Part shown: in pieces, positions 20,501-26,993 of the stretch | How positions within the stretch are numbered: position 1 is the stretch's first letter | Layout of the letters: the number at the start of each line of letters is the position of its first letter | Assembly (NCBI GenBank): GCA_000708835.1 | Contig: DF237073.1 | Span: forward strand, 62,001 to 126,000 | Source of the DNA: Klebsormidium nitens | Lineage: Eukaryota; Plantae; Klebsormidiophyceae | Direction: 5' to 3' | DNA length: 64,000 nt | Translations under genes and position numbers: made by a program | Notes under the pieces: generated by a model | Seen by the model: only the letters and a program-made list of their open reading frames with translations | Told to the model about the DNA's origin: nothing | The model's database searches: none

Positions 20501-20751
20501 AGAATTTCACCATTTGCAACTGTTAACAGGATTTGTTGCAAAAAGTCATCATCCCAACTTTGTAAAGCGTGCTCCTTCGCTGGTACTCTAGTTGGAAGAA
20601 GGTGCCGCTTTCTCAACATGAAAAGTGCGTGTCGGGCTGTTAAAAAAACCTTCCGGTGCGATATTCTCCCTTCGTATTGGCACCCCTCTCTTGTACAGAT
20701 CTGATCAATCACAACGTAATGGCAGGATGCGCTGACTGAGCGCCTCCTCAT
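14537..20751 (-). CDS. Multi-exon hypothetical gene of unknown family; ends unresolved
   Basis: Phase-consistent chain of four GT-AG exons 18910-19001, 18628-18674, 17801-18065, 17126-17294 (CEYGAAVDTLWPNFPDLATNHSDDRLRHITD-ASLHAAVYIMLTLNK-NLWQTASVCL...-DTIVKSGQSQVLAEAFG...). Further splice-bounded exons at 16713-16818 and 15190-15234; open frames at 14537-14746, 19804-20379, 20452-20751. No family recognised. Confidence 0.5.
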
Positions 20752-20847
20752 CCATGCTGCTGCCTGCCAAGTTTTTCAAACGACGAGCAGCAAGTGCAAT
20801 GCCAGCAGTGGGATCTCAGAAGCTTCACGAAAAGACTACAGTTTGTG

Positions 20848-23800
20848 ATGTCTCTTGCTGCTGCAGCCAGCTGCAAGACGACAAGTCTACGAGTCGGAGC
20901 AAGCATCTACAATGCCGTCCAAGCAGGGCCACACAGGAGGTCACTTACACCTGGCCTTACCAGACAAAGCTGGCTGTGTCCACTGCTAATCGAACTGCGC
21001 CAATTGAACACCTCCATGCCACAAAATTTCTATCTCCCAACCTCGCAACCCCCTGCTAGTAAAATCCTGGAAGCACATCTGACCAGTGGGACCCCTTCCC
21101 GCTCAAGCTCCCCAGCTGCAGTTCCAATGAGCAACAATGAAGGGGGCAGCCAGACCAGTGCCCCCGAAAAAGAGGTGTCGCTCATGGCCCACCCCAAGGA
21201 GACGCCGCTCACTGCCCCTCAGCTTCCTCAGGAGAATCCGTCCGTCAAGCATTTCCACAGCATTGCTCTGGGGGGCACCTTCGACCGCCTGCACGCTGGC
21301 CACGAGCTGCTGCTGGACGCTGCGCTGCGAGTTCTCAGCCCCGGCGGCCAGCTCATCATTGGAGTTACCACTGAGGAACTCCTGACAAACAAAGTGCTGG
21401 CAGAGGTGAGCAGAAGCTTCTGGCTTCTGGCTGGTGTTGGCGCCTCGGTTTCTGCTGGTTCCGCTTGGCTGCTGGCCTTGCTTGATTCTGTGCTGGTCCT
21501 CAGGAGAACAGCGTCTGATTCAGCCCATCTCCCTTCTATGTGTAGAGTGTGTTCTTCTTCTATTTTTGATCCAGACCATTCTCCTGAGTGACACGAAGAA
21601 TCCCGCCTCGATAGCCTCACAACTGATGCCCGGCTCAGCTCTTGTTTCATTTGCGCCTGTCTCCGATTGACTGACATGTCCCTTTACCCGAGTGTTCTCC
21701 CCGGCAAGTCACTTTCGTCATCCTTCTCCTGACCAATCATCACAGTACCTCATTTTGGGCTCAATTTATTCGTCCCCTGATCAGCCTCTTTTCCCCCCAG
21801 CTCATCGAGCCCTACTCCTTCCGGGTCTCGCAACTCACCGCCTACCTCCACTCCCGCTCCCCAAACCTCAACCTCAAGATCGTCCCCCTCATCGAAGCAG
21901 ACCCCCGACGGCAGCCTGTTGTAGACAATGCGACACTCGAATGCATCGTCGTCAGCAGAGAAACCGAGGCCGCTGCGACGGCAATCAACGAGGTGCGGCG
22001 GCAAAAAGGTCTGAGGGGTTTAGAAGTCGTGGCAGTGAACCTGGTGGCAGAGGGCTCGGCGTATGGGAAGCTCAGCTCGACGGAGATGCGGGAGAGGGAC
22101 CTGGGACGGTTGTTGACGGACAGGTGATTGGCCTTGGTGGTTGGCTGGTCGCCTGAACTTTGCCAAACAAGATTGGCAGTTCGACCCAGCTCATTGCCCT
22201 CGAACTTTTTCCAGACGTTGTCATCTTCTCCTGATGATCTGCGTCCCGATGTTCATAGCAATCAACCTTTTCTAAAAGATGGGAGGCAGTTCTTGGGGCC
22301 TTCTGTGAAAGGCTCGTTGTTCAAACGTCAACATGTTCAGATGCCTTATGGGTCCAATTGTGACAGCTGCAGCTGCAACAATCTCAACAGATGGCTACCT
22401 GTCCTCCAACGTTGCACTTTATCTGACTACTGGTCTCTACGTTCTGTCGTAAGGCACAGTCACCCGGAAGGGCGGGACAGTGGAGACCCTGAATCTTTCG
22501 GCAAATTACCAAATCGACAAATGCGTTCTGCTGCTACTGACCTCTTCGAATGAACCTACGTGGGGCCTTTTACCTGCAGGCCGTACTTCGTCCGTGGCCC
22601 CCGCCTTTCCCACAAGGCCCGGCTGGCGGCCGCCCACCCATACATGATCGGTCTGACAGGTGGCATCGCCAGCGGGAAGTCATCCGTCCGGCAAATGATA
22701 GAGGACATGCGGAAGGGGGGCCTTGTTACGGAAACAATTGACTGTGACGCGCTCGGGCACCTGTCGTACCTGCCGGGGACCCCGTCATACAGCGAAATTG
22801 CTCGGGCGTTTGGGGAAGGGGTTGTAAGAGAAGGTGAGGGCTGAGGAGTCGCGGCTGTCAAGTAGGTCGAAAGGGTTCAACGAATTGCCAGTAACAGCGA
22901 AGACCAATGGCAATCTCTTGTCAAACTCGGTGCAGTTTTTGTTTAGCAGAAACACAAAAATCTCTAGTTACTTAAGCGAAATGAAGGTTGCCAACGGTCA
23001 CTCCATCAATGCACTCCAACTTGTCGTCCGCCAGGCTGCACATACCTGCCCATCGGTCGACCTCGCCTTGGAACATGCTCAGCAGTCTACGTCAGCAAAC
23101 CGCAGCGCCTCAACTTTTCCCTACATACGTGCGCTTCAGATACTCTCAGCAAGACGTAGAGCTCTCTCCGTTGCAAAGCCTCCTCTAAAATCTTCTCTGT
23201 CGCCAATCCCTCACTCGAACCAACCCCACCATGCGGTCAACAACTTTGATTTAGCAGACGGCACGATCTACCGCTCCGCCCTCAGAGCCACTGTTTTTGG
23301 CGAACCCGCCCGAGTAAGACGGCTCACAAAGTCGCCTTTTCCCCCTTCTTTTCGCAGACGGCACGATCAACCGTCCGGCCCTTGGAGCCATCGTCTTCGG
23401 CGACCCCGCCCAGATGACACGGCTCACATCCATCGTGTGGCCCGCGGTGCGGCGACTCGTCGCCGAGAAGCGCGAGGAGATGGCGGAGCGCGGGGTCCAA
23501 CTCTGCGTCGCAGAAGCCGCGCTCATCTTGGAGTCCGGGTTTGAGACGCAGATGGACGAGGTGTGGGTGGTGTTCGTGCCCCGGGGGGTGGCGCGGGAGC
23601 GGCTGATGGCGAGAAACCGGCTGAGCGGGGAGGAGGCGGACAAGCGGCTGGACTCGCAGGTGGGCGCTGGGGGGTCTGCGCAATTGAAAGCCGATTGTCT
23701 TCCTTGTAATGGGTTTGGAAGGCAGGTTTTAGAGATGGTCAGAATCCATGACATTGATTTTGAGCAAACAGCGAAATCAGCGGTTGATGCATCGCTCGAA

Positions 23801-25819
23801 GCTCTTCGCTTTCTCAGTCGCTCGGATGTTGGCTGCAGCCGCGTCAGGATTGCAGAGCCTAGATACCGCCACGCAACACTCCTCTCCAGTATTTGATGTT
23901 CTCTCCGGCTTGTGCGCTTCGTCAATCTTCGAGCTCTCGACTTCGGGGTAAAACCTTGGTACGTTGTTGGGGACCTTGTATCGCTCTCCATCCTTTTTCT
24001 TTTCTCGACAACTGACGCTCGAAGCCACGTGCCCGCAGATGAGCTCCGCCGCCCGCGTCTCCCGTGCTGACGTGGCAATCAGCAACACTGGCTCCATTGA
24101 AGACACCGCTCGCCAGCTAGATCTCGCGTGGCGACTCCTCGGGGAGCGCTTTCACACCTCCCCGGCGGGGCAGAGCTCCGGAAGTGTGAATGCGCCCATG
24201 TGGGCCCGGTGGTCGGGGCTGATGGACCGGCTAGAAGTCGGGCCGAGCGTGGCGGAGAAATGGTGGGCGGTAGTCCGGGAGAAGTACTCGGAGGAAGGCA
24301 GGTTCTACCACACCATGGAGCACGTGCGAGAGCTCTACCGCCTGTGTCACACGTGAGTAGAGCCTCTAGTCCGCTTTGTGAAGGCGAACGGGTGAACCTG
24401 TTTTGAGTGTACGGCAGCTGGCTCAGGGGTCGACCGTTGAAGCCCCGACTGAGGAAGCTTACATGACGGGCAAAAGGGGTGTCCGGGGTAGGAAGGTGCC
24501 GTGCTAGTCTAGAAACAGACTATCAGGACGCATCATGCTGAGAGCGCCACGGACGTCACAGTTGCCAGTACGTGCGCACTTGATTCAGCCAGAGGGACCT
24601 ATCTTTTGTCTCGTCACCCTTCAGTAAAGCAAACTTAAGAATGCGGACCTGGAACATCGAACTGAACGACCAAAGAAATTCTGCTGCTAATTCCAGCCAG
24701 ATCGTTCCCGTTGTACCTTTCGGCTCGACCAGGTTCTACCCCCAGTAAAGACGCGTCCGTCACCAGGCCCCTTCGGCGTAAAGGAAGTGTGCACACCACT
24801 CTGGTAGTCGCTGTTTTCGGTGTTACGTACCCGTTCCCGCAATCACAGCGGCGCTGCTCCTGCTACCTGTCAGTCGCGGCAAAGCTCTTTCTTCGACGCC
24901 CTCTTCAGGCTGCCGGAGCGGACCTTTTTCTTTTCAAATTTCAGCCGCCGCTGAGCTTTCGACACTGCAGCCCTCGACTCCCACTCTAGTTCTTTCATCC
25001 CTCCAGGTACGCCCACTTCCTTGCCGACCTGCCCGCCGTCCACCTGGCCATCTTCTTCCATGACGTCATCTACGACCCGCGGTGCGCGCGCAAGGGCGGC
25101 AACGAGGCCGACAGCGCGGCGCTCTTCCTGGAGTTCGCGCGCGAGGCGGGCCTTGCTCAGGAGTTGGTCGACAAAGTGGAGGACTTTATCCTAGCTACCG
25201 CGAGTCACCTGGCGGGCGACGCCGCCGGGGACAAGGCCTGGTTCCTGGACTTTGACCTGGCGGTGCTGGGAGCGGAGGAGGGGGCGTACATAAGATACGC
25301 GGACAACATTTGGAAGGTGAGAGTCATTTCAGCCCTCCCCATTGTGCGAGTATGAGTCTGAATGTTGTCGTATGGGGGCGGAGGACTACGCTTAATAGAA
25401 CGTTCACGCTTCGTTTATGGAATAAAGCGTCCAAGATCGTTCAAGTGCTTCGGTCAGAAGGCTTACTGAAGAAGTCGAATGAAGTCGACGCCTTTTGGCA
25501 GAGTCGTACTTGCAATCCACTGAGTTTCCCACAAGACTTCACATCTGGACGTTGTGAGGTTTGCTGATACTCACCGCTCTGGCCGAAAGTGGCGGTGAAC
25601 AGAAGCCTGAAGGATTTAAGTGGGGCGCTTTTGCAGGAGTACCGGCATGTCCCGGAGGAGCAGTACAGACAAGGGCGGACGGCAGTGTTGCGGTCGTTTC
25701 TAGACAGCGGCAATCTTTTCAGGACGGATGCATTGAAAGAGGCTTTGCAGAATCAAGCAGAGCGGAATATCACTGCAGAGATCGTGGGTCTAAGGACTAC
25801 TAACGTCAACTTGACGTGA
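20848..25819 (+). CDS. COASY: CoA synthase (PPAT + dephospho-CoA kinase) fused to a C-terminal HD-superfamily phosphohydrolase; exons 20848-21405, 21801-22123, 22580-22833, 23358-23659, 24039-24352, 25007-25316, 25637-25819; ~747 aa
   Basis: PPAT: GGTFDRLHAGH, CIVVSRET, KLSST. DPCK: IGLTGGIASGKS, IDCDALGH, DGTINRPALGAIVF, EAALILESG, RLDSQM. HD domain: RFYHTMEH, AIFFHDVIYDP, NEADSA, DFDLAVLG, EYRHVP, GRTAVL, AERNI. All 6 introns GT-AG and in phase. Confidence 0.92.
23251..23330 (+). repeat. Intronic copy of the acceptor and first ~75 nt of COASY exon 4, exactly 100 nt upstream
   Basis: 23251-23330 versus 23351-23430: 61/80 identical, no indels (manual alignment). Confidence 0.95.
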
Positions 25820-26993
25820 GCTGCACTTCGAGTTCCATACAGAGACAAATTAGCATTTTTCTAATGATGGCTACTTTTCGTAGACCCAAGCTGAAGCTGC
25901 CCTGTCGTCAGCAACCCAAAGGAGTACGCATCAGGACTGGCGCACTCTAATTATTGTATACGCTTGCCATCCTTGTGCAAGGGCGCTCTCTTCGTCTTGG
26001 TTGCTTGAGGTCAATCAATGCAGATGTTCGGGATCAAAAGGCTAGCGTGCTCCAAGTCAGAAGCATCTTAGCACATCAAAGTATTACGCGTAGCGTTGTT
26101 CAGCTCATCGATGAAAATGCGCCGCCCGACCGACAGCACACTATGCTACCCTGACAACATCTTGGACGTCCAAATGGGCTGGTCAGTCAGACACCTAAAC
26201 GATCACAATGGTGATGGGCCTGTGCGCATGGATATCCGATGAACGTTACGCTCTGGAAACCATCGGGACCGTGCAATTGATCGACATCATGGCCTGTAGA
26301 TTGATGGGCTTGTGGCGGATGCAGATTGGATCCGAGTCATGCGTGTACTATGATGCAAAGAGAAAGCTGCAACCGCGCGGTCACTGCCGTTGGTTTTCAT
26401 AATCAAGCAAGAACAGACTATCTAATTGCATGCGTCGCTTCCAGAGGCCGCTTATATATGCTCAGTGCGCATGCATAGGCTCTCTTCTGCTACATAATGC
26501 GATCCTTTGCATGAGCTGGCAACTGACAACACGAATTCTGCTTCCTGCAAAGACAACAGAACCTAATCAGCACAAATTGTGGCCGGTACAACGAAGCAAA
26601 GCACTTCACATGGAACACGTTGTTTTGGTGACAGGATGATCCCGAATATTCGAGAAAGCACGTCGAAACTCTTTGATACATTGGTATTGGCGTCTCTGTT
26701 TGTAGAGACTGTTCCTTTCTCAGTGCCACGTCAGAATAATGAGATGCAATCAGAAAGCTTGAAAGGCAAGGCTTCGTATGGGAGGCTCAACCTCTATAGA
26801 GGGAAGCGATCAAGTAGTAAGCTGCCAAAGAAGGAATATAAGATCGACCGTCACCAGAGACGGAAATCAGCTCCGACCAAAAGGCTTTTGATTGGGCTCC
26901 CGTTGAATGAGACGTCAACTTCAGCTTTTCAAAGATCATGAAAGACCTTGAATGATTCAACAGGACAGGTTACCTGCGTCCAGGGATGCCGTT

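What the first reader, a model, noticed from the sequence alone, without database searches (positions are those of the whole stretch)
20848..25819. Trifunctional PPAT-DPCK-HD fusion: CoA synthase carrying a putative phosphohydrolase
Seen: one in-phase spliced ORF has PPAT (HxGH, KLSST), DPCK (Walker A GGIASGKS) and a complete HD module (YH..EH, FHDVIYD, DFDLAVLG, EY..VP, GR..VL). The DPCK-HD junction lies inside a single exon (24039-24352: ...DLAWRLLGERF...WARWSGLM...RFYHTMEH), so it is not a gene-model merge. Known: the HD motifs fit the uncharacterised COG4339-type family, and related HD enzymes such as MESH1 remove ribose phosphates from nucleotide cofactors. Inference (Rosetta-stone): this HD family acts in CoA metabolism, e.g. 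as a CoA 3'-phosphatase opposing DPCK or by proofreading aberrant CoA/dephospho-CoA analogues. That would be a self-contained synthesis and turnover system I do not know to be described.
Basis: partly seen in the sequence, partly recalled or inferred. Interest (0 to 1): 0.85.

Follow-up and report, generated by a model that had tools for sequence, protein, structure and literature searches.

The report
CoA synthase with extra HD hydrolase
A real, expressed gene joins the last two enzymes of coenzyme A synthesis to a third, uncharacterised metal-dependent phosphohydrolase domain; the same pairing has arisen several times in unrelated microbes, which points to an unrecognised enzyme of coenzyme A turnover.

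Summary
Seven GT-AG exons (20848-25819, +) splice in frame to a 747-aa protein. It has a PPAT domain, a DPCK domain, a short linker and a complete 215-aa HD-superfamily domain. Spliced transcript contigs from four studies show all six introns, and one contig spans all seven exons. Exon 5 carries both the end of DPCK and the start of HD.

The same three-domain protein occurs in zygnematophyte algae, Picozoa, a choanoflagellate, diplonemids and intron-free protist contigs. The HD family is large (3270 clusters), usually stand-alone at about 210 aa, and has no Pfam or NCBIfam model and no functional name. It is also fused, in other orders, to bacterial-type CoaD, to archaeal/eukaryotic-type PPAT, to DPCK alone and to GNAT acetyltransferases. 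At least 18 of the top 150 representatives are fused to PPAT or DPCK.

Its predicted fold is closest to class I cyclic-nucleotide phosphodiesterases (Z about 15.7). MESH1 is much further away (Z 6.2). In 80 bacterial loci no coaD or coaE lies within 4 kb.

The function is inferred, not shown. The most likely reading is a CoA-directed phosphohydrolase, probably a 3'-phosphatase that yields dephospho-CoA. MESH1, another HD enzyme, was shown to do this in 2026. I found no paper describing this architecture. It is a new variant of a known kind.

The parts
20848..21405 (+). Exon 1. Encodes a roughly 130-aa N-terminal extension of low complexity, followed by the start of PPAT (GGTFDRLHAGH at residues 142-152).
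   Evidence: The equivalent N-terminus of the Spirogloea orthologue is modelled as disordered.
21801..22123 (+). Exon 2. Encodes the rest of PPAT, including KLSSTEMR.
   Evidence: NF001985 55 bits. Intron 1 joint found in 4 runs.
22580..22833 (+). Exon 3. Encodes the DPCK N-terminus with the P-loop GGIASGKS.
   Evidence: PF01121 E 5e-10. Joints.
23358..23659 (+). Exon 4. Encodes the DPCK core.
   Evidence: PF01121 E 4.6e-16, profile positions 61-158. Joints.
24039..24352 (+). Exon 5, the junction exon. Encodes the DPCK C-terminus (to about 24116), a linker (24117-24185) and the HD N-terminus with RFYHTMEH (from 24186).
   Evidence: One open frame, 23964-24356. COASY homology runs to residue 526. 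The HD profile starts at residue 529.
25007..25316 (+). Exon 6. Encodes the HD core: FFHDVIYD, NEADSA, ILATASH and FLDFDLAVLG.
   Evidence: Used as query, it found 3270 family representatives. Family alignments. The 24352>25007 joint appears in 4 runs.
25637..25819 (+). Exon 7. Encodes the HD C-terminal helices (EYRHVP, GRTAVL, AERN) and the stop codon.
   Evidence: Joint.
24353..25006 (+). Intron 5. It is partly retained in transcripts, and retention puts a stop codon directly after exon 5.
   Evidence: Low-depth contigs cover it in all 4 runs. The read-through gives a stop at codon 585.
23258..23313 (+). A decayed tandem copy of the start of exon 4, lying inside intron 3. It has its own AG acceptor and a GTAAGA donor.
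   Evidence: 82% identity to exon 4. Including it would shift the frame to a stop. No joint to it was seen in any run.

Best explanation
This is a single expressed gene for a COASY-type coenzyme A synthase. PPAT converts 4'-phosphopantetheine plus ATP to dephospho-CoA. DPCK converts dephospho-CoA plus ATP to CoA. A flexible linker then carries a third catalytic domain at the C-terminus. That domain belongs to a large, uncharacterised HD-superfamily family of metal-dependent phosphohydrolases with a phosphodiesterase-like fold.

Shown: the gene structure, the transcript, the conserved three-domain architecture, and the recurrent independent fusions of this HD family to PPAT and DPCK.

Inferred: the HD domain acts on a nucleotide of the CoA pathway. 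Dephospho-CoA is the one pathway intermediate that PPAT and DPCK share, and the HD enzyme MESH1 is known to make it from CoA. The reaction I judge most likely is therefore hydrolysis of the ribose 3'-phosphate of CoA or acyl-CoA to give dephospho-CoA. That would pair a kinase with an opposing phosphatase at the last step. Together with the reversible PPAT, it would let one polypeptide move the pool between CoA, dephospho-CoA and 4'-phosphopantetheine.

My odds: the architecture is real, about 0.97. The HD domain works on a CoA-pathway compound, about 0.7. It is specifically a 3'-phosphatase, about 0.35-0.4.
For: - Gene model and transcripts.
- PPAT and DPCK assignments. The two domains are 37-41% identical to animal COASY over about 400 residues.
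- Colinear alignment: window residues 124-740 align in one piece to three-domain proteins of Mesotaenium (48%), Spirogloea (43%), Diplonema, Namystynia, Bicosta, Picozoa and metagenomic protists.
- Uninterrupted ORFs: two of these proteins are single ORFs on intron-free contigs.
- Conservation: 84 of 89 columns invariant among 12 three-domain homologues are kept in the window protein, including every motif residue of all three domains.
- The HD domain covers profile positions 5-210 of 213, at 245.7 bits.
- Other fusions of the HD family: bacterial CoaD-HD (TIGR01510, 132.7 bits); HD-CoaD in dinoflagellates and a haptophyte; archaeal/eukaryotic PPAT-HD; DPCK-HD; HD-GNAT.
- The quick tree places these fusion types in separate groups.
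- Fold: AlphaFold2 model with pLDDT 92. Class I phosphodiesterases come first at Z 15-15.7, aligned over 211-227 of 236 residues. The YHxxxH spacing is shared with PDE8A.
- Precedent: MESH1, an HD enzyme, converts CoA to dephospho-CoA (PMC13221220).
Against: - No enzyme assay exists for any member of this HD family.
- MESH1 is only a distant structural relative (Z 6.2), so the precedent is by analogy and not by homology.
- Most fusions involve PPAT, and several have no DPCK. That fits a product which feeds PPAT at least as well as it fits a 3'-phosphatase.
- None of 80 bacterial loci has coaD or coaE within 4 kb of the stand-alone gene.
- The full-length model has a disordered DPCK-HD linker and pTM 0.55, so nothing supports a fixed arrangement or substrate channelling.
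- A kinase joined to an opposing phosphatase would be a futile cycle unless it is regulated.
Confidence: 0.4

Rival explanations
1. The HD domain is a phosphodiesterase or diphosphatase that releases 4'-phosphopantetheine. The source could be holo-carrier proteins (as AcpH does) or CoA, dephospho-CoA or oxidised CoA. The product would be handed to PPAT and then DPCK, so the protein would be a three-step salvage line for the phosphopantetheine moiety.
For: - The fold is closest to true phosphodiesterases, and the YHxxxH motif has the same spacing.
- PPAT is the commonest fusion partner. It appears in both domain orders and with both PPAT types, often without DPCK. The product of such a reaction would be PPAT's own substrate.
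- AcpH is itself a non-canonical HD phosphodiesterase (PMC8557913).
- From my own impression of the taxa, and not tested: stand-alone genes are common in lineages rich in polyketide and non-ribosomal peptide carrier proteins, such as Nostocales, Chitinophaga, Catenulispora and fungi, and fused genes occur in dinoflagellates.
Against: - Profile comparison with E. coli AcpH finds nothing (probability 0.1).
- The DPCK-HD and GNAT-HD fusions are harder to explain on this reading.
- No 4'-phosphopantetheinyl transferase (ACPS) recurs near the gene in 80 loci.
Confidence: 0.25
2. The HD domain performs damage control or proofreading for the two synthetic domains. It would remove aberrant products such as the 2'-phospho isomer of CoA, oxidised intermediates or dinucleoside polyphosphates. 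This parallels the DUF89 phosphatase fused to pantothenate kinase in PANK4.
For: - A phosphatase fused to a CoA-pathway kinase already exists. PANK4's DUF89 domain dephosphorylates 4'-phosphopantetheine and its oxidised forms (PMC9352595).
- Another HD hydrolase, YqeK, appears among the weaker fold matches (Z 6.8). From memory, YqeK cleaves Ap4A and pairs with the adenylyltransferase NadD.
- All catalytic residues are conserved in both fused and free forms, so the domain is a working enzyme.
Against: - None of these aberrant compounds is documented in the organisms concerned.
- The wide occurrence of the stand-alone form argues for a general substrate.
Confidence: 0.15
3. The HD domain has a job unrelated to CoA chemistry. 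It could be, for example, a cyclic-nucleotide or other nucleotide phosphodiesterase or pyrophosphohydrolase, and the fusion would reflect only regulation or chance.
For: - The best fold matches are cAMP/cGMP phosphodiesterases.
- The nearest solved sequences are BH2835 and YedJ (E 5e-4 and 2e-3). The nucleotide pyrophosphohydrolase YpgQ scores Z 10.2.
- Distant relatives in Bacteroidota are fused to the Pycsar effector domain PycTM.
- There is no gene-neighbourhood link to coa genes in bacteria.
Against: - The fusions to PPAT and DPCK arose independently in at least three or four architectures and account for at least 18 of the top 150 representatives. Chance is unlikely to produce this.
- No member hits Pfam PDEase_I.
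- The class I PDE signature after the HD dyad is not met, because the fifth position is Tyr and not His.
Confidence: 0.15
4. The three-domain protein is an artefact. Two neighbouring genes would have been merged, or the HD exons would belong to a separate transcript.
For: - In three of four runs the main contig stops at the exon 5/intron 5 boundary.
- An intron-5-retaining form would end the protein before the HD core.
Against: - A single 2596-nt contig spans all seven exons, and the 24352>25007 joint is present in all four runs.
- Exon 5 encodes parts of both domains in one frame.
- Homologues have the same architecture as uninterrupted ORFs.
Confidence: 0.02

Closest known systems
Animal bifunctional coenzyme A synthase (COASY)
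   Same: PPAT followed by DPCK in one chain. Identity is 37-41% over about 400 residues, with the same motifs.
   Different: COASY ends after DPCK: query coverage is about 53% and its alignment stops at window residue 526. It has no HD domain. Molluscs and other invertebrates carry the HD protein as a separate gene.
MESH1 (HDDC3), an HD-domain CoA 3'-phosphatase and NADPH phosphatase
   Same: It belongs to the HD superfamily and is metal dependent. It has been shown to convert CoA to dephospho-CoA (PMC13221220), which is the reaction proposed here.
   Different: It is a different HD family (Z only 6.2). It is a stand-alone enzyme and is not fused to CoA synthesis enzymes.
Class I cyclic-nucleotide phosphodiesterases (PDE1-PDE9)
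   Same: Best structural match: Z 15-15.7 with 211-227 residues aligned. The YHxxxH, HD and D metal and acid-residue pattern is shared.
   Different: There is no Pfam PDEase_I hit. The PDE signature after the HD dyad is not met. The domain is about 110 residues shorter, and sequence identity is 10-18%.
PANK4 (pantothenate kinase fused to a DUF89 phosphatase)
   Same: A CoA-pathway kinase is joined to a metal-dependent phosphatase that acts on a pathway intermediate and restrains CoA synthesis (PMC9352595).
   Different: The pathway step is different, and the phosphatase fold is unrelated (DUF89, not HD).
AcpH, the acyl carrier protein phosphodiesterase of E. coli
   Same: It is an HD-type phosphodiesterase whose product, 4'-phosphopantetheine, is the substrate of PPAT (PMC8557913).
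   Different: No sequence relationship is detectable by profile comparison.
YpgQ / YedJ / BH2835 HD hydrolases
   Same: These are the nearest solved proteins by sequence (E 5e-4 and 2e-3). By fold they score Z 9.5-10.2.
   Different: The similarity is weak and partial. They lack the YHxxxH motif with its preceding Arg, and they are not linked to CoA genes.

Membership tests
Bifunctional CoA synthase (COASY type) | PPAT domain with the HxGH and SSTxxR nucleotidyltransferase motifs | tested here: met
   HAGH at 149-152 and KLSSTEMR at 276-283. NF001985 and PF01467 hits.
Bifunctional CoA synthase (COASY type) | DPCK (CoaE) domain with a P-loop, placed C-terminal to PPAT in the same chain | tested here: met
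   GGIASGKS at 321-328. PF01121/TIGR00152 on exons 3-4. Colinear with animal COASY. Confirmed as one transcript.
Bifunctional CoA synthase (COASY type) | PPAT and DPCK enzyme activities | not testable with these tools
   Only the conservation of motif residues is shown.
HD superfamily of metal-dependent phosphohydrolases | H...HD...D metal-binding pattern in an all-helical fold | tested here: met
   H574, H602-D603 and D665/D667 are invariant across the family. 29 of 59 members hit PF01966 below threshold. The model is all-helical, and HD-superfamily proteins fill most of the top fold matches.
COG4339-type HD family | Assignment to the COG4339 profile | not testable with these tools
   No COG library was available. 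IMG names members 'predicted metal-dependent HD superfamily phosphohydrolase'. The window domain is a full-length member of that family at 245.7 bits.
Class I cyclic-nucleotide phosphodiesterase | Fold of the PDE catalytic domain | tested here: met
   Z 15-15.7, rmsd 3.6-4.0 over 211-227 residues. Sixteen PDE entries rank first.
Class I cyclic-nucleotide phosphodiesterase | PDEase_I profile and the HD-x-x-H-x-[AG] signature | tested here: not met
   No PF00233 hit in 59 members. The family has HDvvYDp, with Tyr where PDEs have His. The signature itself is recalled from memory.
MESH1 / SpoT-type hydrolase | Close structural or sequence similarity to the RelA/SpoT hydrolase domain | tested here: not met
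   MESH1 Z 6.2, SpoT 7.4, small alarmone hydrolases 7-8.4, all far below the PDEs. No sequence hit in the PDB.
AcpH (ACP phosphodiesterase) | Sequence-profile similarity to AcpH | tested here: not met
   hhalign probability 0.1, E 0.58. The AcpH side of the comparison was a single sequence, so sensitivity was limited.

The most novel reading that the evidence does not exclude
The roughly 210-aa HD family (thousands of clusters in bacteria, fungi, invertebrates, algae and protists, with no assigned function) would be a dedicated enzyme of CoA turnover that acts directly on CoA, dephospho-CoA or protein-bound phosphopantetheine. In the three-domain proteins, the last steps of CoA synthesis and their reversal or salvage would then sit in one polypeptide. 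This would be a self-contained controller of the CoA / dephospho-CoA / 4'-phosphopantetheine pool, outside the known Nudix and MESH1 routes.
Probability: 0.5. Interest if true: 0.75.

Novelty: new variant of a known kind. Interest (0 to 1): 0.62.

Why it matters
CoA synthesis is well mapped. CoA degradation and pool control are not. Outside animals, which use Nudix hydrolases and, since 2026, MESH1, almost nothing is known.

This finding offers a strong guilt-by-association lead. The fusions are recurrent and independent, so the lead assigns a large, widespread and unnamed HD family to CoA metabolism. The family's fold suggests phosphodiesterase-like chemistry.

The idea can be tested directly with one recombinant domain and a small substrate panel. 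If it holds, it would annotate thousands of hypothetical proteins. It would also reveal a built-in opposing or salvage activity in the CoA synthase of several eukaryotic lineages.

Tried and rejected
- Family scans of exons 5-7: Pfam and NCBIfam gave no family, and the neighbouring ORFs also gave none.
- PDB sequence search with exon 6 alone returned only chance hits.
- Profile comparison with AcpH was negative.
- Bacterial genome scans: alignments A2 and A3 were too diverse for the scan. The CoaD-HD fusion P0107 had no close relative in reference genomes. The cyanobacterial alignment A4 gave 80 loci.
- In those 80 loci, no coaD, coaE or ACPS lies within 4 kb, and the recurrent neighbours reflect only lineage-specific synteny. 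An ACPS gene 5 kb from the Chitinophaga copy was therefore treated as coincidence.
- The full-length AlphaFold2 model was made to look for a fixed DPCK-HD arrangement. The linker is disordered and pTM is 0.55, so it was uninformative.
- The protein atlas was busy for the window exon. For a homologue it returned only generic names.
- Literature searches for COG4339, for PPAT or DPCK together with 'HD domain', and for 'metal-dependent phosphohydrolase' found nothing relevant.
- The careful phylogeny did not finish, so only the quick tree is used.
- The window's own spliced protein could not be given to the large searches by reference. Single exons and the Spirogloea orthologue (43% identical overall, 55% in exon 6) served as proxies, including for the structure model.


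Full report
**Observation.**
The region 20848-25819 (+) has seven open segments bounded by GT..AG. Joined together they give 2244 nt in frame and a 747-aa product. Scanned exon by exon, exons 1-2 match the archaeal/eukaryotic pantetheine-phosphate adenylyltransferase model NF001985 and PF01467. Exons 3-4 match dephospho-CoA kinase (PF01121, TIGR00152). Exons 5-7 match no curated family.

**Transcript evidence.**
Public transcriptome assemblies hold this stretch. I laid four runs from four studies on 20700-26000. All six introns appear as exact GT..AG skips in every run. One 2596-nt contig (X12, record 5) runs from the 5' leader through all seven exons into the 3' UTR. The contigs carrying the HD exons have the same depth as those carrying the PPAT and DPCK exons (48.5 against 47.4, 27.8 against 28.8-32, 20.6 against 21.2, 24.7 against 24.7). 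The runs are labelled RNA only by guess, but spliced contigs can come only from RNA.

**The junction exon.**
Exon 5 (residues 480-584) sits within one open frame. Animal COASY aligns as far as residue 526. The HD profile begins at residue 529. The DPCK-HD junction therefore lies inside a single exon.

**Identity of the third domain.**
I searched exon 6 against 1.84 billion cluster representatives. It found 3270 proteins at E<=1e-3, mostly 200-230 aa long. The window's HD domain (residues 529-743) covers positions 5-210 of a 213-position family profile at 245.7 bits. It keeps the invariant residues (numbering of P0002:470-705): R46, Y48, H49, H53, H81, D82, Y85, E96, S99, T127, D145 and D147. 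The one visible departure is Trp in place of the common Arg in the IR.EY motif.

Members occur in cyanobacteria, Bacteroidota, Verrucomicrobiota, Chloroflexota, Actinomycetota, fungi, molluscs, an echinoderm, a hemichordate, brown algae and many protists. Their names are only generic, such as 'predicted metal-dependent HD superfamily phosphohydrolase' or 'HD domain-containing protein'. Half of the members hit PF01966 (HD) below threshold, and none hits any other family consistently. No member has a solved structure. The nearest solved sequences are BH2835 (E 5e-4) and YedJ (E 2e-3).

**Fold.**
I modelled the HD part of the Spirogloea orthologue with AlphaFold2, using a 59-sequence alignment. 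The model is all-helical with pLDDT 92. In an exhaustive structural search, sixteen class I cyclic-nucleotide phosphodiesterase entries rank first (Z 13.6-15.7, 211-227 of 236 residues aligned). The other HD families score well below them:

| Protein | Z |
|---|---|
| Class I PDEs (16 entries) | 13.6-15.7 |
| An uncharacterised Thermotogales HD protein | 13.1 |
| YpgQ | 10.2 |
| YedJ | 9.5 |
| Small alarmone hydrolases | 7-8.4 |
| SpoT | 7.4 |
| YqeK | 6.8 |
| MESH1 | 6.2 |

(All.) Helical proteins do tend to give inflated Z scores. Even so, the ranking, the coverage and the shared YHxxxH spacing (aligned to PDE8A) all point the same way. The family is still not a class I PDE. It has no PDEase_I hit, and after the HD dyad it has Tyr where PDEs have His.

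**The architecture is conserved.**
Eight of the nine longest hits are PPAT-DPCK-HD proteins. Named sources are Spirogloea and Mesotaenium (Zygnematophyceae), Bicosta (choanoflagellate), Diplonema and Namystynia (diplonemids) and Picozoa. Further examples are uninterrupted ORFs on protist-like metagenomic contigs. The window protein aligns to all of them in one colinear piece, at 36-48% identity. It retains 84 of 89 columns that are invariant among twelve of them. In a quick tree it groups with the streptophyte and related sequences (SH-aLRT 94).

Animal COASY shares 37-41% identity over the PPAT-DPCK part but lacks the HD domain.

**Rosetta-stone evidence.**
The same HD family is fused in several other ways:
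- after a bacterial-type CoaD (P0107, TIGR01510 132.7 bits, on a prokaryote-like contig);
- before a bacterial-type CoaD, in Alexandrium, Polykrikos and Diacronema;
- after an archaeal/eukaryotic-type PPAT (P0112, P0133);
- after DPCK alone (P0089, a complete ORF);
- to GNAT acetyltransferases (Nitzschia, P0099).

At least 18 of the top 150 representatives are fused to PPAT and/or DPCK. The HD domains of the main fusion types fall in different parts of the tree, so several independent fusion events are needed to explain them.

Against this, the stand-alone gene has no coaD, coaE or ACPS within 4 kb in 80 bacterial loci. The genomic link therefore rests on fusion only.

**Mechanism.**
Shown: the architecture, its expression, its conservation, and the fusion pattern.

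Inferred: the substrate. PPAT and DPCK share one pathway metabolite, dephospho-CoA. GNAT domains bind CoA thioesters. HD enzymes cleave phosphoesters using a metal-bound hydroxide. From memory of PDE chemistry, the first His of the YHxxxH motif protonates a ribose O3' leaving group in PDEs. In 2026 the HD enzyme MESH1 was shown to convert CoA and acyl-CoAs to dephospho-CoA, with a Km of 170 uM (PMC13221220).

I therefore favour a CoA 3'-phosphatase, at about 0.35-0.4. The main rival is a diesterase or diphosphatase that releases 4'-phosphopantetheine for PPAT, in the manner of AcpH. It fits the PPAT-only fusions well, but it has no sequence support. Damage control in the manner of PANK4's DUF89 domain (PMC9352595) remains possible, as does an unrelated nucleotide phosphodiesterase role.

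The full-length model shows a disordered linker and gives no evidence for channelling.

**Novelty.**
No paper in the searchable library mentions this architecture or this family together with CoA enzymes. That is not proof of absence, and domain databases could not be queried. I class the finding as a new variant of a known kind: COASY with an added, uncharacterised HD hydrolase.

**Limits.**
The organism is coded. Its nearest homologues are streptophyte algae. Other readers' notes on the same window mention plant-like genes, which I did not check.

The spliced window protein could not be passed to the large searches by reference, so single exons and the Spirogloea orthologue served as proxies.

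Noticed in passing
window 24353-25006: Intron 5 is covered by low-depth transcript contigs in all four runs (depth 3.8-8.6, against 21-48 for the exons and 0-5 for the other introns). Retention places a TGA right after exon 5 and gives a 584-aa PPAT-DPCK protein that lacks the HD core. This could be a regulated two-domain isoform, or it could simply be unspliced precursor.
   Followed up: partly
window 23258-23313: A decayed tandem copy (82% identical) of the first 56 nt of exon 4 lies inside intron 3. It has its own AG acceptor and a GTAAGA donor. Including it would shift the frame to a stop at codon 417, making it a potential poison exon. No splice joint to it was seen in four runs.
   Followed up: partly
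window 20700-20848: The transcribed 5' leader extends upstream of 20700. It carries an out-of-frame ATG at 20754 that opens a 101-codon ORF overlapping the main start codon at 20848. The true start, and any upstream-ORF control, are untested. Residues 1-130 are of low complexity and may be a targeting sequence.
   Followed up: no
L054:3839-5158, L065:3932-5161, L070:3950-5176, L073:3890-5125 (also L076, L083, L084, L086): Bacteroidota (Aquimarina, Polaribacter, Cyclobacteriaceae, Chitinophagales) encode proteins of about 410 aa. Each joins a distant HD domain of this kind (24-35% identity, PF01966 hit) to a C-terminal PycTM domain, the membrane effector domain of the Pycsar cyclic-pyrimidine defence system.
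   Followed up: partly
P0192, P0193 (Nitzschia inconspicua), P0099; P0194; P0197; P0105; P0044: The HD family is also fused to other partners: GNAT acetyltransferases in a diatom, a dimethylargininase, a TetR regulator, DUF218, and a DUF3267 zincin-like domain.
   Followed up: no
P0003 (Mesotaenium endlicherianum, 1219 aa): This gene model carries an NAD-dependent epimerase domain in front of PPAT-DPCK-HD. It is probably a merge of two neighbouring genes in that annotation.
   Followed up: no
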